In this document: positions 5,591 to 50,959 of the stretch, one piece after another
How the letters are laid out: every line of letters starts with the position of its first letter
Numbering within the stretch: the stretch's first letter is position 1
IMG/VR virus record: IMGVR_UViG_3300017917_002374
Coordinates: 1-64,000 of that record
Length of the DNA: 64,000 nt
Strand: one strand, 5' to 3'
The notes under the pieces: generated by a model
Database searches by the model: none
The model's input: only the letters and a program-made list of their open reading frames with translations
What the model was told of the DNA's origin: nothing
Program-made: the position numbers and the translations under genes

Positions 5591-6181
5591 ATGACTCTGA
5601 CCAATAGATCTTGGCAACGATGGATTCCAGGCATTACCAAACTGGTAATCGGAATCGCAGGATTTACATTTTGTGCAACCATGGCAGTAAAAGTCACGAC
5701 CGCCAAAATGAATCAACTACGTGAAGCAAACAATCAGGCACAAACCGTTTTTGTGACTGCTGCCACACGCGAAAGACAGTTAACCTGTCTAGCAAGAAAT
5801 ATCTATCACGAAGCAGGTTTTGAACCTTTTGAAGGCAAAGTGGCTGTAGCACAGGTAACACTGAATCGTGCTGCCAGCGGACAGTTTCCCAATGACATCT
5901 GTGCTGTGGTGTATCAGAAAGGTGTGATCTACGACAAGGTGATTTGCCAGTTTTCCTGGTACTGTGAACAGCCCGGCAAGATGCGCCCAGTGAATCCTGC
6001 TGCCTATGCAGAAAGCTATGCTGTGGCCAAAAAGGTATTGCTGGAAAATTTCCGTCTTGACGGATTGAAGCATGCATTGTATTATCATGCAGACTATGTG
6101 AACCCACAGTGGGGCAAGGAAAAAATTGCCAAAATTGGGCGACATATTTTTTATTCAGATCGTAAAGCAAAAGGCACATGA
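5591..6181 (+). CDS. SleB/CwlJ-type cell wall hydrolase (Hydrolase_2) with N-terminal membrane anchor
   Basis: CLARNIYHEA, VAVAQVTLNR, ICAVVYQ, CQFSW, ALYYHADYVNPQW, IGRHIFY. Confidence 0.92.
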   Translation: MTLTNRSWQRWIPGITKLVIGIAGFTFCATMAVKVTTAKMNQLREANNQAQTVFVTAATRERQLTCLARNIYHEAGFEPFEGKVAVAQVTLNRAASGQFPNDICAVVYQKGVIYDKVICQFSWYCEQPGKMRPVNPAAYAESYAVAKKVLLENFRLDGLKHALYYHADYVNPQWGKEKIAKIGRHIFYSDRKAKGT

Positions 6182-6498
6182 TGAAAAAGTTTAGTGTTGA
6201 GCAATTTCGTGAGGGCACACTGGCCTGGTTCCGTGCGCACCTTACCCATGTAAGTGCCGAAACGCTGGGCTGGATGGCCAGCTTGTTTATTCATTTCAGT
6301 ATCATTCCCAGTCTGCTAGCAGCCATGGCAGGACTCACTGATAAAATGCCTCCTGTGGACATGGTGCTGTTCTGTTGGGGCGCATTGGCCCTGCTGTTTA
6401 TCAAGGCTGTGATGATGCGTGATCGTTTGAACATTCTTACAATTGGCGCAGGCTTTATTGTACAGTGTGTTCTTATGGGGCTCATGTTATTCAAATAA
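6178..6498 (+). CDS. Small membrane protein, about 3 TM helices
   Basis: Three hydrophobic segments; coupled to the hydrolase (ATGA overlap). Confidence 0.6.
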   Translation: MMKKFSVEQFREGTLAWFRAHLTHVSAETLGWMASLFIHFSIIPSLLAAMAGLTDKMPPVDMVLFCWGALALLFIKAVMMRDRLNILTIGAGFIVQCVLMGLMLFK

Positions 6499-6528: not shown

Positions 6529-6777
6529 ATGAGCAAAATCTCCCAAGAAGAACAAGAGCAAGAACAAGAACTGAGCCTGGAAGAAGAACTAGGCATTGAC
6601 GACGAAACTGATTATGGTTTTGTTATAGGCGCAGATGGTGAACTCAAACACCTGTTCACTCCAGATCAGTTCTACCTAGATCCGCCCCCAGTAGTGCGCA
6701 AGATACTAAAACTGCTGGGTATCAAAGATATCAATCTTGTGGCCACAGACAGCGCACCCAGCGACAGCATACACTGA
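6529..6777 (+). CDS. Acidic hypothetical protein
   Basis: SD aggagg and upstream TAAATA. Confidence 0.6.
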   Translation: MSKISQEEQEQEQELSLEEELGIDDETDYGFVIGADGELKHLFTPDQFYLDPPPVVRKILKLLGIKDINLVATDSAPSDSIH

Positions 6778-6820
6778 TTATAGTTTACACCGTGATTTTG
6801 CTATGGTTAAATAGTATATT

Positions 6821-7318
6821 ATGGCCATAGATGCAAACTTATACCCTAATTCCAGTGGACTTGTTCTAAATCGTTTTCTTGGAGTTTTTGCCAACACAGA
6901 CACGATTGATGATTCTACCGGAGCCCTGCAGGTCTGGGGCGGGGTGGCGATTAAAAAAAATCTATATGTTGGCGGCAATACTGTAATTCAAAACACTTCT
7001 CTTGATAATCTCACAGCAAACCTAATCAGTGTAAGCAACGTTGTTGTTGCCAACCTAACAGCTACAACAACCAGTACGCTATCTACTTTGGCTGTGATTG
7101 GTAACATTTCAGCAGCAAACGTTTCAACTGGTAATATAACAGTTTCAGGTAATATTTCAGCTAATAATCTGCTGTCTGATACACTAAGTACACAAAATAT
7201 ACTAGTGTCGGGAAACATTCAAGCTTCAAATGTGATTATCACAGGCACCGGTACCAATCCTCTGGCTGCAATCACACGGTCAGAAGCGTTTGGGTTGAGC
7301 ATTGCGTTTGGACTCTAG
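6821..7318 (+). CDS. Probable virion fibre-like protein
   Basis: STGALQVWGGVAIKKNLYVGG tail-fibre-type motif, GNI repeats; late motif upstream. Confidence 0.65.
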   Translation: MAIDANLYPNSSGLVLNRFLGVFANTDTIDDSTGALQVWGGVAIKKNLYVGGNTVIQNTSLDNLTANLISVSNVVVANLTATTTSTLSTLAVIGNISAANVSTGNITVSGNISANNLLSDTLSTQNILVSGNIQASNVIITGTGTNPLAAITRSEAFGLSIAFGL

Positions 7319-7348
7319 TTCAAACTAAATAGCTTAAAAGGATCAGTT

Positions 7349-7678
7349 ATGAAAGTTGCAGATATTATCCGTGGAGTTCTAGATCTTCTAGATGGGGAAG
7401 ATCGTCCTGTACACGCACAGGGTACCATAGTATTAGGTCCTAAACCGGACACTGTAGAAATTAATCAAGTTGATGATGAGAATGAACTGATCAGGCTCAA
7501 ACAAATTGCTGGATTGATAGGCTCGGGCAATACAGAATTTTCTAACAGTCCTGAAGAAAAAATTGCTGGAATAGAAGCAGTTATACAATCTGGTGATGAT
7601 GTACATCACAGCAAGCATCCTAGTGATATTCGTAGTGACAGCGTGAGCATGTATCCTATGTATCAGAGTAGACCATAA
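7349..7678 (+). CDS. Hypothetical late protein
   Basis: TAAATA upstream; ELIRLKQIAGL motif also echoed in the 34476 ORF (DDLKKKAGL). Confidence 0.6.
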   Translation: MKVADIIRGVLDLLDGEDRPVHAQGTIVLGPKPDTVEINQVDDENELIRLKQIAGLIGSGNTEFSNSPEEKIAGIEAVIQSGDDVHHSKHPSDIRSDSVSMYPMYQSRP

Positions 7679-8088
7679 TGTATCTATTAGTGCAAAGCTA
7701 TCTACAAAGTGCTAGAACTGTGAACCTTACTGTGAACAGTTCAGACACTATCAGCAGTGTAAAAGTTCAGATGTTCACAGCAGAGGGATTTAGTCCTGCT
7801 TACATGGAAATGTACTATAATGGCACCTTGTTGGCAAATGCCAATACTTTGAGCAGTTATGGAATAATATCCAATGATATCTATATCAAGACCAGCAACA
7901 ATATTGCCACATTGGCCACTAGAGAAGCCAGACAAAAGGCCAAGCTGGATCTTGCTGCACTACAGCGCACAGAGTGGGGTCGTCCAGACACCTATGATAT
8001 CACAGAGCTACCCACACAGTACAGCGGCAACACCGTGGTAGACAATCCCAATGCTGGAGGCCTGATAGTTGGTCGCCCATGGAGTTGA
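7678..8088 (+). CDS. Ubiquitin-like (beta-grasp) domain protein with C-terminal extension
   Basis: TVNLTVNSSDTISSVK..EGFSP..NGTLL...TLSSYGI aligns without gaps to ubiquitin residues 12-61 (19/50 identities, hand count). Confidence 0.8.
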   Translation: MYLLVQSYLQSARTVNLTVNSSDTISSVKVQMFTAEGFSPAYMEMYYNGTLLANANTLSSYGIISNDIYIKTSNNIATLATREARQKAKLDLAALQRTEWGRPDTYDITELPTQYSGNTVVDNPNAGGLIVGRPWS

Positions 8089-8091
8089 TCC

Positions 8092-9714
8092 ATGAGTAAT
8101 CCACGCACCAACACAACCAATTATGCTCATCCACAAGAGACCAATCTCTTAAACGTTCACAAGGCCATGGAGTATGACCTTGCTGGCAAACCCATGCTTC
8201 GTGTGGCAGCACAACTGTCAGGCCCCAGCATTGCTGGACAGGTGTCGGCATTTGGTGAACCTCTTGCTATCAGTCCTACGGCAGTTATACAACTAGATGC
8301 TATCTACGGCACTACTACAGATGTAATACAGACTTTTACCAGTGGCACAGGATCATCAGCAGGAGCAGATACACAACTGTTCCGTGTACAGTCAGGAACT
8401 ACCCAAGGCGGATATGGTGTGCTACGTTCAAAGCGTTTCATGCGTTATCGACCAGGACAAGGTATCGTGTGTAGACTCACCGCGGCATTTACAACAGGTG
8501 TGGTAGGCAGTGGTCAGTATGCAGGATTGGCAAATCAAGAAAATCGTGTGGCATTTGGTTGGAATGGCAATCGTTTTGGAGTTGTTCGCAGTACCGGTGG
8601 CAAAGCCACAATATATCTTATGACCATGACAGTGGCACCCAATGCCACACAGACAGCGACTATCACTCTTAACGGTGTTGCCTACACAGTTACTTTGAGT
8701 AACACTTCATCTGACGTAGCTGTACAAACTATTGTGAATCGTGCGGGAGGGTATGGCGGCTGGTTGTTTCAACAAACAGACGGTGCTATGTTATGGTTGG
8801 CGCCCACACTGGGGCCAATGAACGGTACATTCTCGTTTACCAGCACTGGCAATGCTCAGGCAACATTTATACTAAAACAGGTAGGTGTAGCACAAACAGA
8901 CAACTGGACCTATCAAGAAGACTGGAACGTTGACAAGCTGGATGGTACTAACACTATTACAACCAATCCCAGTGGTATGCTGTTGGATCATACCAAGCTG
9001 AATGTTTACCAGATTGGCATGCGTTGGTTAGGTGCTGGAGTGATCAGTTATGCTGTTGAAGATCAAGCATCAGGTGCCATGGTATATGTGCATAGAGAAC
9101 ACTATGTGAATCAACACACCACACCACACACTCTAAATCCCAGTTTTAAAATAACCTATGCTGCCTTTAACACCACTGGCAATACCAGTGTCACAGTAAC
9201 TGGTGCAAGTGTGTACGGCGCAGTAGAAGGCACTATATTCCAGAATGAACTCACCCGCAGCCACAGTGCATCAAAATCCAGCCTCACACAAAATGTCACA
9301 CATCATATGATGACTATTAAAAATTCTGTGGTCACTAACGGACTGGCCGGTGCAAACAATGGCAACTATGTGTTGAATACCAAAGAAGCCATCGTCAAAA
9401 GTTTGAGTGTGTCGGTGCAGGCCACAGATCCGTCACAGGTGTTTTTGTTTTTTGAACCCACTAGTTTTTCTAGCACTCATTTGTACTTTAACATACCGAA
9501 CTGCAACGAAGTGTACAGTGAAGCAACAGGCACATTGAACCTTGCTGTGGACACTCCAGTCTACACAGGTTTGCTTGCCATTAACGGAACTATCAACATT
9601 GATCTTAGTCCCTATCGTATAACCGTTCCGCCAGGTAGTCAGGTCAGCATCGCAGTGCGCAGTACAAATGGTATCACGCAGGCCACAGTGGCCCTGGTTT
9701 GGTCAGAAGATTAA
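8092..9714 (+). CDS. Probable virion structural protein (beta-rich, Thr/Ser/Gly-rich)
   Basis: 540 aa; composition typical of tail/fibre proteins; lies in the late cluster. Confidence 0.6.
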   Translation: MSNPRTNTTNYAHPQETNLLNVHKAMEYDLAGKPMLRVAAQLSGPSIAGQVSAFGEPLAISPTAVIQLDAIYGTTTDVIQTFTSGTGSSAGADTQLFRVQSGTTQGGYGVLRSKRFMRYRPGQGIVCRLTAAFTTGVVGSGQYAGLANQENRVAFGWNGNRFGVVRSTGGKATIYLMTMTVAPNATQTATITLNGVAYTVTLSNTSSDVAVQTIVNRAGGYGGWLFQQTDGAMLWLAPTLGPMNGTFSFTSTGNAQATFILKQVGVAQTDNWTYQEDWNVDKLDGTNTITTNPSGMLLDHTKLNVYQIGMRWLGAGVISYAVEDQASGAMVYVHREHYVNQHTTPHTLNPSFKITYAAFNTTGNTSVTVTGASVYGAVEGTIFQNELTRSHSASKSSLTQNVTHHMMTIKNSVVTNGLAGANNGNYVLNTKEAIVKSLSVSVQATDPSQVFLFFEPTSFSSTHLYFNIPNCNEVYSEATGTLNLAVDTPVYTGLLAINGTINIDLSPYRITVPPGSQVSIAVRSTNGITQATVALVWSED

Positions 9715-9722
9715 TTTTAACA

Positions 9723-10508
9723 ATGAATCATTTTTATGAATCCATATATGGTTGGAGTCATTATCTAATGCCCTGGTACAAGTACATAGTACCATTGTTG
9801 CCTGATAATCCGCAGGTGGTAGAGGTTGGCTGCTGGCACGGTCGTAGCACAGCATGTTTAGCAGTAGAATTAATTAATCATAAGCAAACTTTTAATCTCT
9901 GGGCAGTGGATCATTGGCTAGGTTGTAATGAACCATTTTATTTTCAAAACATCATTCTTGAAGAACTAGCAGAAGATCAGCCTTACAAAATATTCTTAAA
10001 AAACATGGAACCTGTAGTCGATCAACTGAACATCATTAGAGAGACCAGTGTACGAGCAGCAGAACAATTTGAGGATAACAGTTTGGATCTTGTGATACTA
10101 GACGACGACCATGTGCAGGAGGCTGTGGCAAATTCTATCATGGCTTGGTGGCCCAAATTAAAACCAAATGGAATACTATGTGGTGATGATCATGACAGTA
10201 ATTACCCTGGCGTGATAAATGGAGTAAGAAACATGTTTGGCAGCGATCCAGGCAGCTATGCTATCTATACCTATCTAGGCTTCGCTGAAATAGAAAGCAC
10301 CGGAGTGTGGGTGGTACAAAAAACTCCAGACAGACAATTATTAGATCAATCCTTGCCAGAAGATTTTTGGCAATATAAGATTCCTTACAAATCCAACGAT
10401 CACGTTGAACACGAATCAGAAATCATTTGTCAAGATTGCTCTAGCAAAGAAGAAAAAATTATTCCAATTAGTCGCTTGCAAAATCCAAAGAAACATAGTA
10501 TAATTTAA
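9723..10508 (+). CDS. Class I SAM-dependent methyltransferase (Methyltransf_24-like)
   Basis: VVEVGCWHGRS, SLDLVILDDDH, LKPNGILCGDD. Confidence 0.85.
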   Translation: MNHFYESIYGWSHYLMPWYKYIVPLLPDNPQVVEVGCWHGRSTACLAVELINHKQTFNLWAVDHWLGCNEPFYFQNIILEELAEDQPYKIFLKNMEPVVDQLNIIRETSVRAAEQFEDNSLDLVILDDDHVQEAVANSIMAWWPKLKPNGILCGDDHDSNYPGVINGVRNMFGSDPGSYAIYTYLGFAEIESTGVWVVQKTPDRQLLDQSLPEDFWQYKIPYKSNDHVEHESEIICQDCSSKEEKIIPISRLQNPKKHSII

Positions 10509-10532: not shown

Positions 10533-12524
10533 ATGTTTTTTGGATATCTCATTCTTTTAATTGCCATTCTTATTTCGGCGATAGCGGCATACTACTCTGT
10601 GGTAGGACTCACAGCGATATTTGCTGCGGCAGTGCTGCCCGTAATGATCATGGGCGGCGCACTAGAAGCCGGCAAGATTGTGGCCACAGTATGGTTACAC
10701 AATAACTGGCAACGCATAGGATGGGCATTCAAAACCTATCTAGTGCCTGCTATCGTATTTCTCATGCTGCTCACCAGCATGGGTATCTTTGGATTCCTTA
10801 GCAAAGCACACAGTGACCAAGGACTGGTCAGTGGTGACAGTCAAGCCAAACTGGCCATATATGATGAAAAAATTAAAACCTCTCGTGATAACATCGAAAC
10901 CAACCGCAAGGCTCTTAAACAAATGGATGAGGCTGTGGACCAAATCATGGGTCGCAGTACAGATGAAAAGGGAGCCGATAAGGCAGTGGCAGTGCGCCGG
11001 AATCAACAAAAGGAACGTACTAGGCTCCTTGCTGAAATTGACGCCGAGCAGAAAAAGATTGCTCGCCTTAACGAAGAAGCAGCGCCAATACGAGCAGAGA
11101 ATAGAAAGATTGAAGCCGAGGTAGGCCCAATCAAATATATCGCTGCACTGATCTATGGTGACAATCCTGATGCCAATCTACTGGAAGCAGCAGTGCGCTG
11201 GGTGATCATATTGATTGTGATTGTGTTTGATCCTTTGGCACTAACCTTGATTCTAGCTGGTAACAAACAACTGGAGTGGGCTCGCGAAGATCGTCGTAAA
11301 CAAGATCAAGAGTTTGATGAGAAGTATGTGGAAATACCCACAGAGCCAGCCAAGGAGTTTAGCCTATTCCAGTGGACCAAGCCAGAAGAAATTCCTCCTG
11401 AAGAAGAAAAGTCTGTTGAAGTGGCACAAAATGTACAAGACACGCCACCACCTCCGGAGGATCTTGGGTTGTGTCCAAAATGTGATACGCCTATACAGTC
11501 AGCACCGGGTATCGGCCCATTCTGCCCTAATAAAGACTGCGATGTAGTAGATGGGTTAGAACAGGCTAGAAAAGAATTGGCAGACAAAGAACAAGAAGAA
11601 TTTTTCTTCCGCAGCCGCATGATTGCCAAAGGCCTGGACGCAGAAGAACAAGAACGCATGATCACTGAAGCCAACACTGCTTTGGCGGCTATTGGCGATC
11701 AAGACTATGACATTGAGTCTGTGGTAGAACAAGCAGAAAAAATCAATGCCTACGAACAACAGATTGCCGGTCTAGCAGAAGAAAAAGAAAATCTAGCAAT
11801 TGAAAAAAACAAATTGCAAGAAGCACTGGATCTGTTGGCAGTGGAATTTGAAAGAGTAAACAACCACCTGCCTGATGTAGAAGTGTATAGAAACCAACTA
11901 GAACAGCAGGTGGCGCAACTGTCGGCTGAAAAATACATCATTGAACGAGAACTGGTTAGCACAAAAGAAACTCTTGAGTCCACAGTGCAAAGACAACAGG
12001 AACTAGAACAGTTTTTGGACACACTGCCTCCTCAATTGGATCAGCTGGAGACAGTAAAAACTCAACTGCAAACTGAAATTCAAAGTCTGTTGACTGACAA
12101 TCGTCAGTTGAGAGAATGGGTGGATCAACTGGAAAAAGATCTTAAAGAAGCAGTTGAACTAGCACAGCAAAAAACCCAAGCACTGGCACAAGTTCAAGAA
12201 CCGCAGGTGGCTGTGACAGCCGACAACGATGACGGCACTCCCAATGACACCAAGGCAACTTTTGGTACAGAATTTCCTAAAAATCAAAAGAAAGGTGATC
12301 TTTTTCTAAGAGTGGATTATTTGCCCAGCAGACTGTTCAAGTGGAACGGAACCAAGTGGATTGAGATTGATAGAGATCAAACCGATCGCTATGCCTATGA
12401 CAGCGCATATATAAGAATGCTGGTAGAAAAACTGCAATCAGGCGAATATGATATTGATGATTTAAACGAACTAGAAAGATCACAAGTAAGCACATATCTA
12501 AACGATCCTCGTACGGATGCATAG
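10533..12524 (+). CDS. Multi-pass membrane protein with coiled coils and a C4 zinc ribbon
   Basis: N-terminal TM helices, further TM near aa 225, CPKC...CPNKDC, long heptad region. Confidence 0.7.
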   Translation: MFFGYLILLIAILISAIAAYYSVVGLTAIFAAAVLPVMIMGGALEAGKIVATVWLHNNWQRIGWAFKTYLVPAIVFLMLLTSMGIFGFLSKAHSDQGLVSGDSQAKLAIYDEKIKTSRDNIETNRKALKQMDEAVDQIMGRSTDEKGADKAVAVRRNQQKERTRLLAEIDAEQKKIARLNEEAAPIRAENRKIEAEVGPIKYIAALIYGDNPDANLLEAAVRWVIILIVIVFDPLALTLILAGNKQLEWAREDRRKQDQEFDEKYVEIPTEPAKEFSLFQWTKPEEIPPEEEKSVEVAQNVQDTPPPPEDLGLCPKCDTPIQSAPGIGPFCPNKDCDVVDGLEQARKELADKEQEEFFFRSRMIAKGLDAEEQERMITEANTALAAIGDQDYDIESVVEQAEKINAYEQQIAGLAEEKENLAIEKNKLQEALDLLAVEFERVNNHLPDVEVYRNQLEQQVAQLSAEKYIIERELVSTKETLESTVQRQQELEQFLDTLPPQLDQLETVKTQLQTEIQSLLTDNRQLREWVDQLEKDLKEAVELAQQKTQALAQVQEPQVAVTADNDDGTPNDTKATFGTEFPKNQKKGDLFLRVDYLPSRLFKWNGTKWIEIDRDQTDRYAYDSAYIRMLVEKLQSGEYDIDDLNELERSQVSTYLNDPRTDA

Positions 12525-28991: not shown

Positions 28992-30292
28992 GGTACCAAG
29001 ATTTTTTAGCGGAAGGCATACTGTTTGAATATGATAGAACAATCACTGCCAAGAACTATGGAGACAAGATTTTACTTGTAGCAGCCAAAGACCGTTGGCT
29101 GGTTGATCAAATTGCAGGACGCAATCGTCTAGGCATGAGCTTTCAAGAAGCAGTGAAAAAAGATCCTGCCATGATCATAGATGCTATTTTAGAAATACTA
29201 GAACGTGGCGATCCCACCCGCAATAAAGAATACACACAGGCCATTGCCAAGATGTATGCCAATGGTGGCATCATGGCAGAGGATGTGGTATCCACTCTAG
29301 CAGACTACCTGGCTAAGTTTGACAAGCTGAAACGCCGGAAGAAAATTCCGCCGCCACGTAACGACTTCAATCGTTACAAGAGCAAGGATGATTTCTATGA
29401 TGTGGTGGATGAATATCCTGACGAAGAAGCAGAAGACAAACCAGAAGAAAAAAAGAACGCTACGGAACTGTATCGTGATAGCAAACTGATTGTGACCATA
29501 CCCAATGATGTGGAAGCTGCCTGTTACTATGGACAGGGCACACGCTGGTGTACAGCGGGCAAGAACAATAACATGTTTGACTACTATACCAAGGGAGGCC
29601 GTCCACTGTATGTGATCATTCCACGACAGCAGGAGTACCCAGGTGAAAAGTATCAGTTTCACTTCGAAACCAAGCAGTTCATGAATGAACAGGATCGTCA
29701 GATTGGCGAAGACGGCATGCGCAAGCTGGTCAAGCGTTTTCCACAGTTGCCCAAGATCCTGCAGAAGCCTGCAGAGCAGTTCATGATTGCACCACTACTG
29801 TCGCAGGAATACAAGAACATCGTGATAGAAAGCACAGAAGAAGTTCAGAAGGCCACTGTGCAGTTGATCAATCAGTATGCTGACCGTATCATTGCATTTG
29901 GATTCAAGAGTTTGGATGGCTATGGTGTGCAATTGCCAGACGCAGCAAAACAGACCATTGCAGACAGCATGCGTGACTACTTGGCTGACTGTGTGAAAAA
30001 CATGGGCAGCTTTTGGCAGGAGATTACTGCCAAACCAGAACTGGCTCGTGATGAAGACAAGATTGAAAGCCTGCTGAGTGCCAACAGAAATCTACAGGCA
30101 GTGGCAGATAAAAGCGCAGCGGTGGACCAGCTGAAAGCAGCACTGGCACAGACCGGACAGAAGATTCACAAGGATGCAATGGCACACATTATTGAACTCA
30201 CAGTGCGTGATCCACTGTTCCGCTTCATGATGAAACAGGTGGCCAAACTGTACACCGCTAAACTACAGGAGCAGGGCCATGCGCTACAGTGA
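28988..30292 (+). CDS. Putative head-packaged protein with YGxGTxWC domain (PcfJ-like, tentative)
   Basis: N-terminus MRYQDFLAE; AACYYGQGTRWCTA, KYQFHF. Confidence 0.55.
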   Translation: MRYQDFLAEGILFEYDRTITAKNYGDKILLVAAKDRWLVDQIAGRNRLGMSFQEAVKKDPAMIIDAILEILERGDPTRNKEYTQAIAKMYANGGIMAEDVVSTLADYLAKFDKLKRRKKIPPPRNDFNRYKSKDDFYDVVDEYPDEEAEDKPEEKKNATELYRDSKLIVTIPNDVEAACYYGQGTRWCTAGKNNNMFDYYTKGGRPLYVIIPRQQEYPGEKYQFHFETKQFMNEQDRQIGEDGMRKLVKRFPQLPKILQKPAEQFMIAPLLSQEYKNIVIESTEEVQKATVQLINQYADRIIAFGFKSLDGYGVQLPDAAKQTIADSMRDYLADCVKNMGSFWQEITAKPELARDEDKIESLLSANRNLQAVADKSAAVDQLKAALAQTGQKIHKDAMAHIIELTVRDPLFRFMMKQVAKLYTAKLQEQGHALQ

Positions 30293-32141
30293 ACTGATTG
30301 AAAACACAGACAGCGACGATGATTTGTTTGCTAAACCATTGGCGGATAGAATTCGTGCTCGTTTGGCAGAGTTAGAAGATCAGGACTTTATGGAACCTGA
30401 GGACATGATTGACCAGGTGGCTGAGGAGTTCAATCTAGAAGTAGAACAAGTTTATGATCTACTGGATGACGAAGTATACGAAAACACAGATGACGATGAT
30501 CTGTTTGGCGGCAGTGATCGCGGGACGCCCTCTCCTGAGAAGGCAGTGGCCAAGTTCAAGATGTTTTTTCCTATAAACAAGCGTGTGAGCTGGAGTAAGA
30601 TGCATTTTGGAACCGTTGACCGCTTGTTTGGCTTCTCCACCGACTCACGTTTTCACGCAGGAGCCAGTTATGACAGACACAGCTACTGGGGCACACAGGC
30701 CTATACCAATCGCCAGACTGGCCTAGGCTTGCTGATCTATGAAGACAGTGGTCAAGGTACCTGGGCATATCTAGGCGCACAGAGTCGTGAGGATATGGCT
30801 CACATGATACAGCAGTTGATTGCAGCAGATCAGTTGGAAGATCCTGAGGCAGCAAAGCAACGTCGCCTGGCCAAACAACAAGGCCGTGCTGCTGCCGCTG
30901 AGAAAAAAGGCATTCGTGTGGGCGCCAAGATACGAGTACCCTACCAAGGACAAACTGCCACAGCAGAAGTGGTCAGCATTTCCAAGGCTGGTAAACTGAA
31001 CCTACGCATGATAGATGGACCAGATGCAGGACAACTGCACTCCTGGCAGCCCTCCGCACACAGCGTTAGAAAAGCAGATGTGCTAGGTGAGAATGATGAT
31101 GACGATGACGAGCTGTTTGGTGAGCCAAGATCCTACATGTTCATTGTGGCAGCTCCAGATGATGAAATAGTAGGAAACTACAAAAATATTGAAGATGCTC
31201 TAGACGCAGCACGATTTTTAGTAGATGATTATCTAGAGGCAGGCTATGAGGACACTGATGCTATTAGAGTTATGAAATACAAAACAGACAGTGATGGCAT
31301 GGTTGATTTTGACGAAGCAGGGGTCACAGTTGGCACTATCTATCTAGGCACAGGAGAACTGGCAGAAAATTTTGACGACGATGATATGTTCGCTACCCCC
31401 ACAATCAAGTTTGCTGACTTGTTCAACGAGTACGACGAGGATCAATTAATGGCACAAGGTTTTCAATATGGAGACCATCCTGAGCAGGACATTGAAATAC
31501 TCAACGACTATTTAGAAGACTATAAAGATTTCCGTGTGGTTGGTATCAGTGGCGGCGAGCATGACCTAGTGCTGCATCTAGACCGCAGCAGCAAACTAAG
31601 AGAAACAGACGATGATGAACTGTTTGGTTCACTAGCACTAACCGCTGCCAAGATTGGTAAACTGTTAGGTGCAGCAGGCATAACCAGTGGTGAAATCGTT
31701 GATCCTGAAAGCGTAAATCTAGCCTTGCACAGAATTGCGGCACTGGACAAGTATCGTATCCGGGCAGAAATCATGCAGCAGCAGTGGTTGAACATGGATG
31801 AAGACACTGCCTGGAACATGGTAGATGACATAGCCAATGTGGTATACGACATCAACGGTGACGGCTGGGAACCAGAAGACACCATCTACAACGAATCAGA
31901 TGATGAGCTGTTTGGTAAAAAGTGGCATGAGCGCATCAACATGAGCAGCATTGAGTTGGACGGCATAGATCGCAGTGACAGTCCTGACTTCTCAGATGCT
32001 CATGTGAGCTATGCAGAGTTTGACGACGGCAAGCCACTGAATAATGAACAGTTGGAATGGCTGACCAATGAGCTGGGCAGCACAGGTGAATTGCATGAGC
32101 TGGTCTGGGACAGTTTGCACGAGGGCCAGCATGCGTTATAA
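30279..32141 (+). CDS. Modular acidic polyprotein-like protein, 6 xE-DDDLF linkers
   Basis: LIE-NTDSDDDLF, VYE-NTDDDDLF, LGE-NDDDDDELF, LAE-NFDDDDMF, LRE-TDDDELF, YNE-SDDELF. Confidence 0.75.
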   Translation: MRYSELIENTDSDDDLFAKPLADRIRARLAELEDQDFMEPEDMIDQVAEEFNLEVEQVYDLLDDEVYENTDDDDLFGGSDRGTPSPEKAVAKFKMFFPINKRVSWSKMHFGTVDRLFGFSTDSRFHAGASYDRHSYWGTQAYTNRQTGLGLLIYEDSGQGTWAYLGAQSREDMAHMIQQLIAADQLEDPEAAKQRRLAKQQGRAAAAEKKGIRVGAKIRVPYQGQTATAEVVSISKAGKLNLRMIDGPDAGQLHSWQPSAHSVRKADVLGENDDDDDELFGEPRSYMFIVAAPDDEIVGNYKNIEDALDAARFLVDDYLEAGYEDTDAIRVMKYKTDSDGMVDFDEAGVTVGTIYLGTGELAENFDDDDMFATPTIKFADLFNEYDEDQLMAQGFQYGDHPEQDIEILNDYLEDYKDFRVVGISGGEHDLVLHLDRSSKLRETDDDELFGSLALTAAKIGKLLGAAGITSGEIVDPESVNLALHRIAALDKYRIRAEIMQQQWLNMDEDTAWNMVDDIANVVYDINGDGWEPEDTIYNESDDELFGKKWHERINMSSIELDGIDRSDSPDFSDAHVSYAEFDDGKPLNNEQLEWLTNELGSTGELHELVWDSLHEGQHAL

Positions 32142-34479
32142 CGAGATCATTGAAAGTGCGGATGATGACGATGACCTGTTTGGTCGCGGTCTGCATCATC
32201 GTATCGCTGCGGCTCTACTGGCACAGGCCGAGGAAGACCAGCGTATCGCAGATGAAGAACGCGGACTAGGTGACCAGATTCATCGTAATGTGCAAAACGC
32301 AGATGAGTTTGAAGCACAAGCTAGAAACTATCGTTACATAGCAGACGCTTTTAATCAAAGCATGGCTCAGGGAGTTAAAGTTTATCGCAGTCTAGACCGC
32401 AGCTGGAAAGGTGCAGTGGATGATGTTGTGGACATTGAGCTTGACATGGACTTCCGCGACTATGTGAAACAGATTCCAGAAAGTGCGGATGACGATGACT
32501 TGTTCTCTACCAGTCCAAAGTTGGATCGCCGTCAAGAGCTGAAAGCCAAGGCCATTCGTCGCATAGAAAAGCGTGACGCACTGAACATACAGCCAGGCAC
32601 ACGACTCATGGTCAAATGGGACAATGGCAAATACTACAAAGGCAAAGTGGTCAGACTCACTCCCAGTGGCCGCGTGATAGCACAGGTAAAGTTTCACAAT
32701 GTGGGCTGGCCCTTGGAAAAGAACATCAGTCCACGTGACATCAAGCCTGAACACATCTTGAAAGAAACAGATGATGACATGTTTGCCAAGAACAGTCAGA
32801 TGAGCCAAGACATCAAAACCAAGCTAAAACAAATTGATGATCCTTATCTGCGCACTGTACGCAAGATTCGTGAGTTGGCAAAAACCAAATATGGTGCAAA
32901 AATTCGTGTGAGTGGTGCACCCAAGACATCGGCCCGCGGCAGAGCAACTGTTTGGGTGGGCGACTATGATGCAAATTATCAAATTCCAAAAACTACCCCT
33001 GAGGCCTATGCTGTAAAAAACGATTTAGAACAGATGGGATTTGAGTGTCGTTTTACAGACGCAGGTTGGCTCAGTGTCAAGGTTCCGCCAGTGTTCTCTG
33101 ATCTAATCAGCGAAGAAAGCGACGACGAGCTGTTTGGGCAAGAAGATGGCGCTCGTCTGGCACTGAAACTATTGAAACTGTTACGAGCAGCAGTGGCTCG
33201 CGATCCTCGTGGTGTGGGTGAAATGCTGAAACAGTACAGCAATGAAAACAGCACTCTGGCACAGAGAGTAGATTATACCTTGGATTACATGGCACAGGCC
33301 GTGGGCATGCCACGTGAGATATTTGACAAATACGCAGATGACTTTTTCATACTGCCATGGCCCACAGGTGTGGACATAAACCGTCCATGGCAGATCTGGG
33401 ATGCACAGGTGTTGGACCGAATCATTGAGACCATGCGACGAGTGGTTTATGGCCGGGACATGAATGAAAGTGATAATGACGATGACCTGTTCAGCCATAG
33501 TGTGCATGAAGAAGTGATATATCGTGTGGAAGAATATAAAAAAGGTCTTGAAAAACATCTAGAAGTAGTACAGCAGGCAGATCCTGAAGACGCAGAATAT
33601 CTTGAGGATGTGATCAATGATGTGAATCAAGTGTTGGCCAAATTGCAGAAAAATTGGATAGAAGGCATGGATGCACTGCTACAAGCATCAGATAGCGAGG
33701 ACTGGGCAGAAAATATCATGCACGAACTCAAGGCAGATAATATACCGTTGAACAGATACTACCGCGCACCTTGGCTGCGCGAAGACGCAGACGATGATGA
33801 ACTGTTTGGTGAAACTACCTTGGCAGATCGTGTGGCTGATTTAATCAAGCACAAGCAACGTGTACGCATTCTAGTACCTGGTGCCATGGGCTTTGTGCGA
33901 GCTGTATTTCATGGCAGCACTGCTATCAGTCGCAGCATGAAGAGCACTACACGCTACGCCTGGCCAGGACTGCACGGCGAACGAGCTAACGGCCTTGAGT
34001 TGGTACAAAATCCTGCCACACGCACCTGGGACATTGTAGAGCGAGACCAGGCTGTAAACATGCGTAAATACACAGAAGACATTGGTGACGATGAACTGTT
34101 TGGCAGCGGCTACAGTGCTGTGCAAAGACAGATCTATGAAACAGGCCGGCAAATGTTGCAAGCACTGAAAGACAGTTGGAAACAGGATTCTGTGCGCAGC
34201 GAATTTCAAACTTACATGGATGCCGACGATGGCGACGCTATGTTTGATCTTGTGCAGGATGTGACCAGAGTGCATGGTTGGCCAGCACTGGTAGTAGACA
34301 CTGTGATTCGTGAATACACTACCATGGAAGGACTCAACGACTTTGGCTGGATGCTGGAAGAAGGCAGCTTCAACGACCTAGAGGAAGCCTGGGAAAGATT
34401 TAGAACAGATAGAGAAATCAAAAACGAACCCTGGTTCCAAGCGGAAGCAGACAGATTTATGAAAAGAAAACTAAGATGA
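32131..34479 (+). CDS. Modular polyprotein-like protein, 7 xE-DDDLF linkers
   Basis: Start MRYNEIIE at 32131; IIE-SADDDDDLF, IPE-SADDDDLF, LKE-TDDDMF, ISE-ESDDELF, MNE-SDNDDDLF, LRE-DADDDELF, YTE-DIGDDELF. Confidence 0.75.
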   Translation: MRYNEIIESADDDDDLFGRGLHHRIAAALLAQAEEDQRIADEERGLGDQIHRNVQNADEFEAQARNYRYIADAFNQSMAQGVKVYRSLDRSWKGAVDDVVDIELDMDFRDYVKQIPESADDDDLFSTSPKLDRRQELKAKAIRRIEKRDALNIQPGTRLMVKWDNGKYYKGKVVRLTPSGRVIAQVKFHNVGWPLEKNISPRDIKPEHILKETDDDMFAKNSQMSQDIKTKLKQIDDPYLRTVRKIRELAKTKYGAKIRVSGAPKTSARGRATVWVGDYDANYQIPKTTPEAYAVKNDLEQMGFECRFTDAGWLSVKVPPVFSDLISEESDDELFGQEDGARLALKLLKLLRAAVARDPRGVGEMLKQYSNENSTLAQRVDYTLDYMAQAVGMPREIFDKYADDFFILPWPTGVDINRPWQIWDAQVLDRIIETMRRVVYGRDMNESDNDDDLFSHSVHEEVIYRVEEYKKGLEKHLEVVQQADPEDAEYLEDVINDVNQVLAKLQKNWIEGMDALLQASDSEDWAENIMHELKADNIPLNRYYRAPWLREDADDDELFGETTLADRVADLIKHKQRVRILVPGAMGFVRAVFHGSTAISRSMKSTTRYAWPGLHGERANGLELVQNPATRTWDIVERDQAVNMRKYTEDIGDDELFGSGYSAVQRQIYETGRQMLQALKDSWKQDSVRSEFQTYMDADDGDAMFDLVQDVTRVHGWPALVVDTVIREYTTMEGLNDFGWMLEEGSFNDLEEAWERFRTDREIKNEPWFQAEADRFMKRKLR

Positions 34480-36722
34480 AAAGCAAAGATTTCCTAAATG
34501 AAAAGTGGAGCCAGAAGTACAAGAAGAGCATCAACTGCTCTAACCCCAAAGGCTTCAGCCAACGTGCGCACTGTGCAGGCCGCAAGAAAAACGAAAGTGT
34601 GGAACTGGATGAAATTGATCGCAGAGGATTCCTCAAGGGCCTTGGTGCTGCTGCACTGGCAGGTGCAGGTGGCGCTGCCATGGCAGGAGATCTAGAAGGT
34701 CAGATAGGCCCACTGCCCATCATGGCTACTATCAAAGTGCAGATGCCAGACGGCACTGTGAAAACAAAAAAGATTGATCTTGGTCATGAGTACGACTACA
34801 GACTGGATGATGCCAAGAAAGAAATTGAACAGATCCTGGATCGCAAGGGCGTGAAGAACTATACCATTCACTTGGACAGATACAAGGACAATGAGGCATA
34901 TCTGGATCGTGAACAGATGAAGCCGCAGTCAAAGACTGACAAAAACGACTACATGGATCGTAAACCCTATCAGCCCAAAGGCGGCAGTGGCAGCTATGTG
35001 GACAACACACCTGCCCGGGCCAGCGGCAAACACAACTACATGGATCCTGCCAACTACGAAGAAAGTTTACAGGAATACGGCGATACTGCCCGAGGTCAAA
35101 AGCAGTTGACCCGGGTTCACAAACGTGCAGTTGATCGTCTAATCAAGGCAGATGACCAAAACATGTTAGAGCCAGATTATACCAAAAGAGATTTAAAAAC
35201 AGTAAGAAAGAATGCAGACACTGCTAACCGTGCTTGGGATAGATTCACAGATCTGGATTTAGATGAAGCATCAGTTTATAAAAAAGATCAAGACCTAAGC
35301 AGTATTCCTACTCAAGAACTTGAAGCATTTGTTAAAAAACATTGGGGTGGTGGTATTCCAACTTATGGCCAAGGCAAAAGTGTTCAACGAGCCATGCGAG
35401 AATTGCGCCGCAGACAAAAGCAAGGTGTGGCGGAAGGCTCTGCTGGAGCAAAATACAAAATAAAAAGCATTGGCAAAGACAAGAACGGTGATTACTACAT
35501 CAGCCCTAACACAGGCAAAAAAGTTTACAAGAATGCTAAAGTGGGTGATCACGAAACTCCACGCGGGGAAGTAAAACCTAAGGTGACGGAAAACAATGAC
35601 AGTGATGAAGAATTGTTTAGCGTGTCTCAAACGCCACCACGAACAGCACAGGCACTATACCATTGGAGCCGCATGGATCCCAACAGATACAGTTTTCGTG
35701 CCATAGCTGAATTTGCCTTGAGTAACAAGCTGACCTTAAAGCAGGCACTGGAAGTTACTTCAAGGTTTGACGAGTACAACGAACAGATGCAAGATGAATA
35801 TGGTGTTGATGATGATCAAATGAGTGATCTGTTTGGCGCATATGAAGAAGTGTGTGATGCATGGAACACTGATCCAACAGGCGATACCAGTACAAATGAC
35901 TCCTGGGAAAAACTACGAGAAGCAGATGCAGAACTAGCAGAACCACCTGAGCGTCCACGCAAAACCACAACAAAGACCAAGACCAAACCTGATATCAAAT
36001 TTGATATTCCGTTCCAGCAAGATCAAGATCGTCCTCTGGCCAAAACAGATCCACTGGATGACTTGAAAAAGAAAGCTGGACTAGGTGATGAGCCTAAGGT
36101 CAACATTAAGAAGGCCAAACAAAAGGATACCTTGAGCAAAACCGCAGGCATTGGCAGTGATGACATGGCAGACATGCTGAGTCGCATGCGTAACATTGAA
36201 ATAGATCGTGATCTAGAAGCCTATCCAGAGCCAGAACCACCAGAGCAGTTGCCATCAGTGGAAGTGAACACAGCCAATTTGCCAGCAGTGGCAGGGCAGG
36301 CATTACAAGCCGCAGGCGTGCAGAATCCAGATTTCCATCAAGTGGCTAACCTGCCAGGCAACATGGCAGACCAAATTCGCCAGCTGGGCAAGAGTCTGTT
36401 TGGCAGTCTAACCATGACACCTACCAAGCGTATTCACGTGGTGGCCAATCTAGGCGGACAAGGCCCTAACAGCTCAGCAGAAGTAAACGCAGTGGCCGGC
36501 TTCCTAAAAGACCACGGTAAAGATCTAGGCCCAGGCGACATTGACTTTGACAATGTCATGCCAGGCTACAAGGCACAAACACACATGTTCTCAGCAGCAG
36601 GCATTCGCTGGATGCTGGTAAAAGACTTTGCCGGACAGTACATCTACTGCTGGCCAGAAGAAGACAGCCATGATGCAGTGGATGCGATTGGCCAGGACAC
36701 GGACGTTAAAAGACTAAAATGA
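34476..36722 (+). CDS. Modular polyprotein-like protein with internal Tat-like signal
   Basis: MKSKDFLNE; LDE-IDRRGFLKGLGAAALAG; QGVAE; VTE-NNDSDEELF; further LQE/LDE/LRE joints. Confidence 0.7.
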   Translation: MKSKDFLNEKWSQKYKKSINCSNPKGFSQRAHCAGRKKNESVELDEIDRRGFLKGLGAAALAGAGGAAMAGDLEGQIGPLPIMATIKVQMPDGTVKTKKIDLGHEYDYRLDDAKKEIEQILDRKGVKNYTIHLDRYKDNEAYLDREQMKPQSKTDKNDYMDRKPYQPKGGSGSYVDNTPARASGKHNYMDPANYEESLQEYGDTARGQKQLTRVHKRAVDRLIKADDQNMLEPDYTKRDLKTVRKNADTANRAWDRFTDLDLDEASVYKKDQDLSSIPTQELEAFVKKHWGGGIPTYGQGKSVQRAMRELRRRQKQGVAEGSAGAKYKIKSIGKDKNGDYYISPNTGKKVYKNAKVGDHETPRGEVKPKVTENNDSDEELFSVSQTPPRTAQALYHWSRMDPNRYSFRAIAEFALSNKLTLKQALEVTSRFDEYNEQMQDEYGVDDDQMSDLFGAYEEVCDAWNTDPTGDTSTNDSWEKLREADAELAEPPERPRKTTTKTKTKPDIKFDIPFQQDQDRPLAKTDPLDDLKKKAGLGDEPKVNIKKAKQKDTLSKTAGIGSDDMADMLSRMRNIEIDRDLEAYPEPEPPEQLPSVEVNTANLPAVAGQALQAAGVQNPDFHQVANLPGNMADQIRQLGKSLFGSLTMTPTKRIHVVANLGGQGPNSSAEVNAVAGFLKDHGKDLGPGDIDFDNVMPGYKAQTHMFSAAGIRWMLVKDFAGQYIYCWPEEDSHDAVDAIGQDTDVKRLK

Positions 36723-50145: not shown

Positions 50146-50330
50146 AAACAGTTTGGATCATGGTCGTGCTAGTAATAGCAGATGGTGAATGGAGAGAGTG
50201 GGATCACCATTACGCTAGACTAGAAGAATGCCTTGAAGCCAAAGAAATACTCACACATCGCAGAGAACATCTTTTAACCATACGCTGCGAACCAAGACAA
50301 GTAAAATCACTTGACATTCCTGAAAAATAA
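50142..50330 (+). CDS. Small protein with N-terminal hydrophobic segment and Cys pair
   Basis: MKTVWIMVVLVI...EEC...RC. Confidence 0.55.
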   Translation: MKTVWIMVVLVIADGEWREWDHHYARLEECLEAKEILTHRREHLLTIRCEPRQVKSLDIPEK

Positions 50331-50345
50331 ATATACACTGTAATC

Positions 50346-50717
50346 TATTGCTGTATGAAGCAGATTGAAAGGCGTTCTGGACGCGGGTTCGACTCCCGCC
50401 TGGTCCACCAAAAGTATATTACTAAGAGTCCAGGTTCAGAGCGTGGCATAATATACTTCTGATGGGCCAGACATGGTTTCGACAGGGTGATGAGTAAGGA
50501 AGTGGACAGCACGGCAATGCGAAAGCCGTAGGACAGGGGTAACCCGGTCGTAGAAGCAAACCAAGTAAATGCAAAAGCATCTACAACAGAGAGCGCAGTA
50601 AAAGTAACCAAAGCACGTGGTTTCCGTTTCGGCGGTGCTCGTGTTGCGGCAGCTGACGCTGCTTTCGCCTAATCAGCGAAAACTCCGGGGCAGTTATGCC
50701 TTGTAACCCAAAATAGC
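50346..50717 (+). ncRNA. ssrA: Circularly permuted (two-piece) tmRNA
   Basis: Acceptor piece with T-arm gcggg-ttcgact-cccgc and ctggtcc-ACCA ends at 50410; coding piece starts gggccag at 50464; 7-bp acceptor stem with G3.U70; tag ORF 50571-50672; promoter TTGACA(50311)-17-TACACT; outer ends approximate. Confidence 0.92.
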
Positions 50718-50741
50718 AAAACGGCCTTCGGGCCGTTTTTT
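50718..50741 (+). terminator. Terminator after tmRNA
   Basis: aaaacggcc-ttcg-ggccgtttt plus T. Confidence 0.85.
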
Positions 50742-50758
50742 CTTTTATAAATATCTGC

Positions 50759-50959
50759 ATGTGGGTATTAATCATCAGCTTGTATTTGCCGCAGCCTTTA
50801 GGATTCACTCAGAGCAAAGGCATCATTCAGGCTCCACAGCCCAGCTACGAAACCTGCATGCGCGAACGCGACAGAATCAAAGCCACTTGGTACACAGACG
50901 GCTATCGTGTGAGTCCACGTTGTGTGTACATCAAATACTACGATCCTCGTGGCAGTTAA
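50759..50959 (+). CDS. Small hypothetical protein
   Basis: TATAAATA-N5-ATG; MWVLIISL, Cys pair. Confidence 0.55.
   Translation: MWVLIISLYLPQPLGFTQSKGIIQAPQPSYETCMRERDRIKATWYTDGYRVSPRCVYIKYYDPRGS

What the first reader, a model, noticed from the sequence alone, without database searches (positions are those of the whole stretch)
7678..8088. Eukaryote-like ubiquitin domain in a phage late gene
Seen: residues 14-63 align without gaps to ubiquitin 12-61 with 19/50 identities (SDTI, VK, EG..P, G..L, TLS.Y.I). This looks closer to true ubiquitin than to ThiS/MoaD. There is no Gly-Gly at the domain end; a ~65-aa tail follows, with NAGG eight residues from the C-terminus. The gene sits among virion-type genes, and no E1/E2/JAB gene is in the window. 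Known: some bacterial defences (Bil, CBASS Cap2/Cap3) use ubiquitin-like conjugation, including onto virion proteins. Inference: a decoy or inhibitor of such systems, or a structural domain.
Basis: partly seen in the sequence, partly recalled or inferred. Interest (0 to 1): 0.75.

Follow-up and report, generated by a model that had tools for sequence, protein, structure and literature searches.

The report
Captured ubiquitin on a jumbo-phage module
A 355-kb freshwater T4-like jumbo phage encodes a true ubiquitin-fold domain, descended from eukaryotic ubiquitin but unable to be conjugated, welded to a very conserved 63-residue phage module that in related phages carries sugar-binding domains, so it looks like a virion-surface or assembly part, not a ubiquitin-signalling or anti-defence factor.

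Summary
ORF 7678..8088 (+, 136 aa) passes Pfam ubiquitin (36.1 bits; cut-off 25.4). It aligns without gaps to ubiquitin 9-61 (19/53 identical). Its model (pLDDT 93.5) superposes on ubiquitin at about 1 A over 75 residues. Relatives in other uncultured phages are up to 66% identical to canonical ubiquitin, so the domain was captured from a eukaryote-type ubiquitin.

The more conserved part across the family is the 63-aa tail (NxIxxL...LPTQY...GGLxxGRPW), not the ubiquitin domain. The tail occurs:
- alone (68 aa);
- with C-terminal LamG, PA14/GLEYA or ILEI lectin domains;
- with ubiquitin at its N-terminus;
- with both.

It was single-copy in all five T4-type jumbo genomes checked. It was absent from 50,697 GenBank phage records and found once in 185,579 species genomes.

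In this phage it lies in a tightly packed three-gene cassette with a 109-aa acidic protein and a 540-aa protein with a ConA-like lectin fold, annotated as a virion structural protein.

Ubiquitin's Gly-Gly, its lysines other than K27 and its Ile44 patch are not kept. The genome has no E1 or JAB gene. Best reading (inferred): a non-conjugatable ubiquitin domain on a virion anchor or adaptor module. The decoy idea has no support. No published description was found.

The parts
7678..8088 (+). Gene for the 136-aa ubiquitin-plus-module protein. Its ATG shares a base with the stop of the upstream gene (ATGA).
   Evidence: ORF list and sequence. More than 637 full-length homologues in metagenomes. One copy in the genome.
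7678..7896 (+). Ubiquitin-fold domain, residues 1-73. It has a 2-residue insertion in the beta1-beta2 loop (VQSxLN) and no C-terminal RGG.
7897..8085 (+). Conserved 63-aa 'GRPW module', residues 74-136: NxIxxL, helix 82-99, hairpin 113-122, then NPNxGGLxxGRPW. No Pfam, PHROG, NCBIfam or PDB match.
   Evidence: Invariant columns N74, Q86, K89, L92, R97, L111, G128, L129, R133, P134, W135. Occurs alone or with other domains in IMG/VR loci. No family hits.
7349..7678 (+). Upstream cassette gene, 109 aa: N-terminal amphipathic helix (MKxxDIIRxxLDLxD), an acidic linker, then the motifs (Y/F)xNxPxE and KHP(A/S)DIR...MYP. Function unknown.
   Evidence: Homologues sit next to the module in 44 of about 85 loci. 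Alignment A6. No family hits.
8092..9714 (+). Downstream cassette gene, 540 aa, all-beta. Residues about 60-380 form a concanavalin-A-like lectin / GH16-type sandwich, with further beta domains. Family phrog_1645, 'virion structural protein'.

Best explanation
The gene encodes a two-part protein.

Part 1 (shown). Residues 1-73 are a real ubiquitin fold that descends from canonical eukaryotic-type ubiquitin, taken up by horizontal transfer into a lineage of uncultured freshwater T4-like jumbo phages. It was joined at about ubiquitin residue 70 directly to the N-terminus of a pre-existing phage module, which removed the LRLRGG tail. The domain keeps ubiquitin's fold-determining core and K27. It has lost the Gly-Gly, the other lysines and the Ile44/His68/Val70 patch. 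It therefore cannot act as a conjugatable modifier and is unlikely to be read by ubiquitin-binding machinery.

Part 2 (shown as anatomy, function inferred). Residues 74-136 are a very conserved, single-copy 63-aa module, NxIxxL...LPTQY...GGLxxGRPW. In sister phages it occurs alone or carries LamG, PA14/GLEYA or ILEI sugar-binding domains at its C-terminus. It usually lies beside lectin-fold or fibre-like virion genes.

Most likely mechanism (inferred). The module is an anchor or adaptor that docks onto a conserved virion component, and whatever is fused to it is displayed on the particle. In this phage the displayed unit is the compact, stable ubiquitin domain. The neighbouring 540-aa ConA-like protein supplies glycan binding as a separate polypeptide.
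For: Ubiquitin nature:
- Pfam above cut-off; gapless alignment.
- Model pLDDT 93.5, superposed on ubiquitin at about 1 A.
- Family members reach 42/64 identity to ubiquitin.
- The closest non-phage relatives are canonical eukaryotic ubiquitins at 65-67%.

Loss of modifier features: per-column analysis of 128 sequences shows that K6, K11, K29, K33, K48, K63, I44, H68, V70 and RGG are not kept, while I3, V5, K27, I30, L43, L50, T55, L56 and I61 are. No ThiF or Prok-JAB gene in the 355-kb genome.

The module as the constant element:
- Mean pairwise identity 67% against 43% for the ubiquitin part.
- IMG/VR loci show module alone (68 aa), module+C, Ub+module and Ub+module+C.
- C-terminal domains among 19 long members: LamG_3 in 7, GLEYA/PA14 in 5, ILEI in 2.
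- One copy in 5 of 5 jumbo genomes, all five with a T4 gp23 capsid gene (own genome).

Neighbourhood:
- A tightly spaced cassette of up, module and down genes, with gaps of 0-4 nt.
- The down protein has a ConA-like lectin fold that also resembles phage receptor-binding CBMs, and its cyanophage homologues are annotated as virion structural protein.
- In another sub-lineage the gene overlaps the stop codon of a 1019-aa tail-fibre-like gene.

The model is one compact body (pTM 0.83), so the ubiquitin domain packs on the module rather than hanging free.
Against: - No direct evidence that the protein is in virions. The family has no cultured member, so no proteomics or structure exists.
- The docking partner is unknown.
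- Three complete jumbo genomes carry the module but lack the 540-aa family, so that neighbour is not the obligatory partner.
- The module has no detectable similarity to T4 Soc or to any solved chain by sequence.
- The gene lies about 230 kb from the core head genes.
- The order of events (module first, ubiquitin added later) rests on a poorly resolved 63-column tree with no root. The opposite, loss of ubiquitin in some lineages, is not excluded.
Confidence: 0.5

Rival explanations
1. Assembly factor that does not end up in the virion. The module (with or without ubiquitin) would be a chaperone or scaffold that helps fold or mount the adjacent lectin-fold or fibre proteins and is then released. 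The ubiquitin domain would act as a folding and solubility aid.
For: Tight gene spacing with the 540-aa lectin-fold gene, or with a 1019-aa tail-fibre-like gene. The small size and single copy are typical of fibre chaperones, by general knowledge of T4 gp38/gp57-type helpers.
Against: A chaperone would not normally be fused permanently to LamG, PA14 or ILEI domains. The module persists in genomes that lack the 540-aa family. The complex prediction gave no verdict and counts neither way.
Confidence: 0.2
2. Intracellular effector or regulator. The invariant C-terminal GGLxxGRPW peptide would plug into a conserved host or phage machine, and the ubiquitin domain would be a stabilising or steric add-on.
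For: Extreme conservation of a short C-terminal motif and a single copy per genome. The location is far from the head/tail core genes and near early-type genes such as rIIA and DNA ligase.
Against: In many relatives the motif is internal, followed by extracellular-type lectin domains. That is hard to reconcile with a C-terminal plug or a cytoplasmic regulator.
Confidence: 0.1
3. One reading: a ubiquitin decoy or inhibitor that jams host ubiquitin-like conjugation defences (Bil, CBASS Cap2/Cap3).
For: It is a true ubiquitin fold without a conjugatable end, encoded by a phage whose genome lacks its own E1 and JAB. Bil is reported to conjugate a Ubl to phage tail proteins (bioRxiv 10.1101/2023.09.26.559546, listed; not read in depth).
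Against: - The bacterial defence Ubls are not close to eukaryotic ubiquitin, and no PADLOC model matches.
- Across the family the ubiquitin surface drifts (43% identity) while the tail is fixed.
- Many phages carry the tail with no ubiquitin at all.
- The lectin fusions make no sense for a cytoplasmic decoy.
Confidence: 0.07
4. A processed modifier. The protein would be cut after N-A-G-G (residues 125-128) and the exposed Gly-Gly conjugated by a host enzyme.
For: A Gly-Gly pair lies 8 residues from the C-terminus, and G128 is invariant.
Against: - G127 is kept in only 70% of sequences, while the residues after the supposed cut (L129, G132, R133, P134, W135) are invariant.
- The Gly-Gly lies 55 residues beyond the ubiquitin fold, within a model that is confidently folded throughout.
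- In fused relatives the chain continues into lectin domains.
- No E1 or JAB in the genome.
Confidence: 0.02

Closest known systems
Eukaryotic ubiquitin and ubiquitin genes captured by eukaryotic viruses (baculovirus v-ubi, pestivirus inserts, giant-virus ubiquitins)
   Same: Same fold and clear sequence kinship. The window protein is 19/53 identical and relatives reach 42/64. BFVD hits include baculovirus, BVDV and giant-virus ubiquitins. In both cases a virus has captured a cellular ubiquitin.
   Different: The carrier is a tailed bacteriophage with a T4-type capsid gene. The C-terminal RGG, the lysines other than K27 and the I44 patch are lost. The domain is permanently fused to a phage-specific module.
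BfUbb, the eukaryote-like ubiquitin of Bacteroides fragilis
   Same: A prokaryote-world ubiquitin about 63% identical to human ubiquitin, thought to come from inter-kingdom transfer and not used for conjugation (PMC3352274, PMC5705921). Its structure 8hm1 is among the top fold matches.
   Different: BfUbb is a stand-alone secreted antibacterial protein. Here the domain starts at residue 1 with no signal peptide and is fused to a 63-aa module. The family is phage-borne and has hundreds of members.
Capsid decoration and display proteins of T4-like phages (Soc, Hoc)
   Same: By analogy only. A small single-copy protein of a T4-type phage whose two ends tolerate extra domains, including adhesin-type domains, as Soc does in engineered display and Hoc does naturally (general knowledge).
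   Different: No sequence similarity to Soc (hhalign probability 0.03). Virion location is untested and the docking site is unknown.
N-terminal anchor domains of phage receptor-binding proteins or fibres with swappable C-terminal lectin modules
   Same: A conserved N-terminal piece followed by variable LamG, PA14 or ILEI domains. Neighbours have a ConA-like fold that resembles the phage CBMs 9n6a and 5ly8, or are tail-fibre-like.
   Different: Only one copy per genome. The piece is very short (63 aa), often stands alone, and matches no known anchor family.
Bacterial ubiquitin-like conjugation defences (Bil, CBASS Cap2/Cap3) and ThiS/MoaD
   Same: Beta-grasp fold.
   Different: No C-terminal glycine at the end of the domain, no E1 or JAB partner, no PADLOC hit. 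Pfam places it in ubiquitin proper, not ThiS/MoaD.

Membership tests
Ubiquitin family (Pfam PF00240), as a fold and homology class | Profile score above the curated gathering threshold | tested here: met
   36.1 bits against 25.4, E 5.4e-9; 37 bits in the genome scan.
Ubiquitin family (Pfam PF00240), as a fold and homology class | Beta-grasp fold with the ubiquitin topology | tested here: met
Ubiquitin / Ubl protein modifiers (functional class) | C-terminal Gly-Gly (or Gly) at the end of the beta-grasp, free or exposed by processing | tested here: not met
   Ubiquitin residues 71-76 are replaced by the module. The only GG lies 55 residues later and is followed by invariant residues.
Ubiquitin / Ubl protein modifiers (functional class) | Conserved acceptor lysines and the L8/I44/H68/V70 recognition patch | tested here: not met
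   Across 128 family members K6 is Q in 100%. K48 and K63 are kept in 0-2%, I44 in 1% and H68 and V70 in 0%. Only K27 (91%) and L8 (77%) are kept.
Ubiquitin-like conjugation systems (Bil, type II CBASS, 6E/JAB operons) | Cognate E1 (ThiF), E2 and JAB/DUB genes in the same element | tested here: not met
   No ThiF or Prok-JAB match in the 354,959-bp genome, with controls ringing. The UQ_con search was uninformative because no control rang. No PADLOC hit.
ThiS/MoaD sulfur carriers | Match to the ThiS/MoaD profiles and a C-terminal GG | tested here: not met
   A Pfam scan at E up to 1 listed only ubiquitin, Rad60-SLD and Ubiquitin_2. No terminal GG.
BfUbb-type secreted bacterial ubiquitin | Stand-alone ubiquitin with an N-terminal signal peptide | tested here: not met
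   Ubiquitin strand beta1 starts at residue 2 and a 63-aa module follows. Seen directly in the sequence.
T4 Soc small outer capsid protein | Sequence or profile similarity to Soc (PF16855) | tested here: not met
   hhalign of the module alignment against T4 Soc: probability 0.03. The genome scan with PF16855 was empty, but its controls did not ring.
T4 Soc / Hoc-like decoration (functional class) | Binding to the assembled capsid surface | not testable with these tools
   No cultured member.
Lambda gpI-type (TAPI) ubiquitin-like tail assembly proteins | Ubl domain encoded next to a JAB/NlpC tail-tip protein (gpK-like) | tested here: not met
   No Prok-JAB in the genome. The neighbours are a 109-aa acidic protein and a ConA-like protein. 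The TAPI profile itself was not searched.

The most novel reading that the evidence does not exclude
Freshwater jumbo phages captured a eukaryotic ubiquitin and display it on the outside of the virion, on a natural display peg (the GRPW module) that in sister phages carries lectins. The exposed ubiquitin would be under selection for what it does outside the bacterial host. Examples would be interaction with eukaryotic cells or surfaces (grazers, algal or animal mucus), or with ubiquitin-binding proteins met after ingestion. It would not be there merely as a stable filler domain.
Probability: 0.1. Interest if true: 0.85.

Novelty: new variant of a known kind. Interest (0 to 1): 0.62.

Why it matters
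Eukaryote-type ubiquitin outside eukaryotes and their viruses is very rare. [quoted passage not shown]

Here a whole family is carried by uncultured T4-like jumbo phages: more than 600 clusters at 90% identity, seen in freshwater metagenomes from at least a dozen studies. Some members are still 66% identical to ubiquitin. This gives a datable, stepwise record of how a captured ubiquitin is stripped of its signalling features and reused as a plain structural domain.

The work also defines a new, extremely conserved 63-aa phage module with interchangeable N- and C-terminal cargo. If the module proves to be a virion anchor, it is a natural display scaffold and a handle for studying adhesion in uncultured giant phages.

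Finally, it is a caution for annotation. 'Ubiquitin family' hits in phage genomes should not be read as ubiquitin signalling or anti-defence.

Tried and rejected
- Complex prediction. The upstream 109-aa, downstream 540-aa and ubiquitin-module proteins, each with its own alignment, scored 0.00. The tool gave no verdict and this is not evidence either way.
- Cultured phages. A search for the family in 50,697 GenBank phage records used the window protein, a module-only protein and the most ubiquitin-like member. None matched, so no annotated or proteomically studied relative exists.
- Cellular genomes. A scan of 185,579 species genomes gave one hit, on an 18.6-kb contig of a Crocinitomicaceae MAG. 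This is too little to name a host.
- Module family searches. Pfam, PHROGs, NCBIfam, PADLOC and a PDB profile search with the module gave nothing.
- Soc hypothesis. No Soc profile hit in the genome (controls silent) and no hhalign similarity.
- Rosetta-stone check. The C-terminal domains of fused relatives are not homologous to the 540-aa neighbour by BLASTP. They share only the broad ConA-like/lectin class by fold or Pfam.
- Module tree. The tree built to time the ubiquitin fusion has 63 columns, is poorly resolved and has no root. The ubiquitin-bearing state needs 6 changes on it. The most ubiquitin-like members sit near the ubiquitin-less ones, but no order of events can be claimed.
- Late promoter. 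No TATAAATA within the cassette region.
- Fold searches. With the whole model against AFDB clusters and the ESM Atlas, only the ubiquitin part matches cellular proteins. The full fold is matched only by phage relatives.
- GH16 activity of the 540-aa protein. I considered it and did not adopt it. The window copy shows no evident ExDxxE motif where the family consensus has D-x-E-W. This was by eye only.

Full report
**What is there**

The window is the first 64 kb of a 354,959-bp virus record with direct terminal repeats, rated complete. The record carries a T4-type major capsid gene gp23 at 238,131-239,123 (337 bits). Its closest capsid relatives are Sinorhizobium phage Phosso, Vibrio phage 2.275.O and the Pseudomonas PA5oct group, at 69-76% identity. 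It also has rIIA. It is therefore a T4-like jumbo phage.

The DNA is found in pond and freshwater metagenomes from at least a dozen studies.

The ORF 7678..8088 (+) encodes 136 residues.

- Pfam ubiquitin PF00240 scores 36.1 bits against a cut-off of 25.4.
- Residues 11-64 align without gaps to ubiquitin 9-62, with 19 identities in 53 columns.
- AlphaFold2, run with a 46-sequence alignment, gives pLDDT 93.5 and pTM 0.83.
- There is no Gly-Gly where the fold ends. NAGG lies 8 residues from the C-terminus.

**It is a captured eukaryote-type ubiquitin**

The protein belongs to a family of more than 637 clusters of about 136-141 aa in metagenomes. Identity of members to canonical ubiquitin runs from near nothing up to 42/64 and 43/67 (P0014, P0015, P0030).

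With the ubiquitin part of P0014 as query, the nearest non-phage proteins are ordinary eukaryotic ubiquitins at 65-67% identity, for example from Salpingoeca, Phytophthora and fishes. That is as close as BfUbb of Bacteroides fragilis, which is 63% identical (PMC3352274).

In the whole-library phmmer search, polyubiquitins dominate, each repeat matching residues 11-64 at about 35% identity.

**It is not a modifier**

A column-by-column comparison of 128 family members with ubiquitin shows two things.
- Kept: the core residues I3, V5, I30, L43, L50, T55, L56 and I61, and K27.
- Not kept: K6 (Q in every sequence), K11, K29, K33, K48, K63, I44, H68, V70 and the LRLRGG tail.

Ubiquitin residues 71-73 are overlaid by the first invariant residues of the tail (N74, I76).

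After the late G127-G128 pair come invariant L129, G132, R133, P134 and W135, which is the opposite of what a processing site would show.

The whole genome has no ThiF-type E1 and no Prok-JAB, with controls positive. The UQ_con search was uninformative. PADLOC and NCBIfam give nothing.

**The tail is the real family**

Mean pairwise identity is 67% in residues 74-136 and 43% in the ubiquitin part. Within the window's own close clade the ubiquitin part is also well kept (88-90%), so it is under selection and is not decaying.

Scanning IMG/VR with the family gave 183 confirmed loci, of which 80 were fetched. They show four architectures:
- the module alone, 68-72 aa, starting M-A-A-N-G-I-S-T-L;
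- module plus a C-terminal domain (186-457 aa);
- ubiquitin plus module (136-147 aa);
- ubiquitin plus module plus a C-terminal domain (286-367 aa; up to 536 aa).

One protein has a long N-terminal domain before ubiquitin plus module (P0189).

The C-terminal domains are LamG_3 (7 of 19 long members), GLEYA/PA14 (5) and ILEI (2). All are carbohydrate-binding or adhesin-type domains.

Ten representative modules are 75% identical per column, while neighbouring genes of the same phages are only 20-35% identical.

The module:
- is single-copy in 5 of 5 jumbo genomes examined, all five of which have gp23;
- has no match in Pfam, PHROGs, NCBIfam or PDB sequences;
- has no equivalent, as part of the full fold, in AFDB clusters or the ESM Atlas other than phage relatives;
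- is absent from 50,697 GenBank phage records;
- occurs once in 185,579 species genomes, on a short contig of a Crocinitomicaceae MAG.

**Neighbourhood**

In this phage and in many relatives the gene is the middle of a tight cassette.
- Upstream: a 90-116-aa gene with an N-terminal amphipathic helix, an acidic linker and a KHP(A/S)DIR..MYP motif (alignment A6). It overlaps the start codon of the module gene.
- Downstream: a 430-670-aa gene that starts 0-4 nt after the module gene's stop.

In a census of about 85 loci, 44 had the small gene adjacent and 34 had the large one directly downstream, whether or not ubiquitin was present.

The large protein (540 aa here):
- belongs to phrog_1645, 'virion structural protein';
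- has homologues annotated as virion structural protein in Synechococcus phages S-T4 and S-B05; in S-T4 the gene lies between the two terminase genes;

In another sub-lineage the ubiquitin-module gene overlaps the stop of a 447-1299-aa gene. The one examined, 1019 aa, has a C-terminus that matches a tail-fibre PHROG.

However, three complete jumbo genomes that have the module lack the 540-aa family. That protein is therefore a frequent companion, not an obligatory partner.

**Interpretation**

Shown:
- a ubiquitin fold of eukaryotic descent;
- its fusion, without Gly-Gly, to a conserved phage module;
- the modular architectures and the synteny.

Inferred:
- Lectin-type cargo and lectin-fold or fibre-like neighbours make sense mainly outside the cell.
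- The module is far more conserved than its surroundings and is single-copy.
- Together these suggest that the module docks on a conserved virion component and exposes its cargo.

On this reading, the ubiquitin domain in this phage is the cargo, or a stabilising cap packed on the module (pTM 0.83). I give this reading 0.5. A non-virion assembly helper (0.2) and an intracellular role for the GRPW peptide (0.1) remain open. The decoy (0.07) and processed-modifier (0.02) ideas are poorly supported.

The predicted three-protein complex gave no verdict.

**Order of events**

On a 159-row tree of the module, the most ubiquitin-like members lie next to ubiquitin-less ones. This fits a fusion inside that group followed by divergence. 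But the tree has only 63 columns, weak support and no root, so this is a lead only.

**Expression**

One 255-nt contig from a freshwater metatranscriptome covers 7600-7854 with two differences, and another run covers parts of the 540-aa gene. DNA carry-over cannot be excluded.

No T4-type late promoter motif lies near the cassette, so 'late gene' is unproven.

**Literature**

Full-text searches found no description of a eukaryote-type ubiquitin in a tailed phage. A comparative review of 224 jumbo phages mentions ubiquitin only in passing, about eukaryotic viruses (PMC7824862).

Noticed in passing
window 50318..50763 (+): ARAGORN calls a tmRNA-like gene, flagged with '*', with a 33-residue tag peptide ending AADAAFA. 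A phage-borne tmRNA would be unusual.
   Followed up: no
window 5591..6498 (+): Probable lysis cassette about 1.2 kb upstream of the ubiquitin cassette. It has a SleB-type cell-wall hydrolase (PF07486, 89 bits) with an N-terminal membrane segment, followed by an overlapping 106-aa membrane protein. The same hydrolase lies upstream of the cassette in related contigs L005 and L006.
   Followed up: partly
window 6821..7318 (+): A 165-aa protein rich in N/T/S with repeats such as 'GNISAANV' and 'GNISANNL', which looks fibre-like. It has no family hit. In a close relative from run X6, the 900 nt at 6767-7668 (this gene plus the 109-aa gene) are replaced by 361 other letters.
   Followed up: partly
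window 10533..12524 (+): A 663-aa protein with three N-terminal membrane helices, long coiled coils and a C-terminal match to phrog_11591, 'virion structural protein'. A protein with a match to the same PHROG sits directly after a module-only gene in another jumbo phage, locus L050.
   Followed up: partly
window 9699..10508 (+): A Methyltransf_24-family methyltransferase (65 bits) sits between the two structural-type genes. Its start overlaps the end of the 540-aa gene.
   Followed up: no
window 30279..38998 (+): Four consecutive large genes (620, 803, 748 and 759 aa) have no Pfam or PHROG match at all.
   Followed up: no
L005:10199-11590: A related phage contig encodes ribosomal protein S21, an HSP20 and ClpS a few kb downstream of its ubiquitin cassette.
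   Followed up: no
L060:1683-5048 (also L061, L062, L064): In a 383-kb phage the module-plus-C-domain gene follows a 1122-aa multidomain protein with glycosyltransferase and methyltransferase PHROG matches. This hints at glycan chemistry around the module.
   Followed up: no
L003:6723-8687 and L004:6463-12414: In one sub-lineage the gene after the ubiquitin-module gene (beyond a 95-aa gene in L003) is a 654-aa protein with an Ice_binding domain. In a near-identical context in L004 it is an ORF of more than 2000 aa.
   Followed up: no
L093:4302-5177: A 292-aa protein begins with the module's first residues (MAANGISTL) and ends with GRPW, with about 220 unrelated residues between them. This looks like a domain inserted inside the module. 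Pfam finds nothing.
   Followed up: partly
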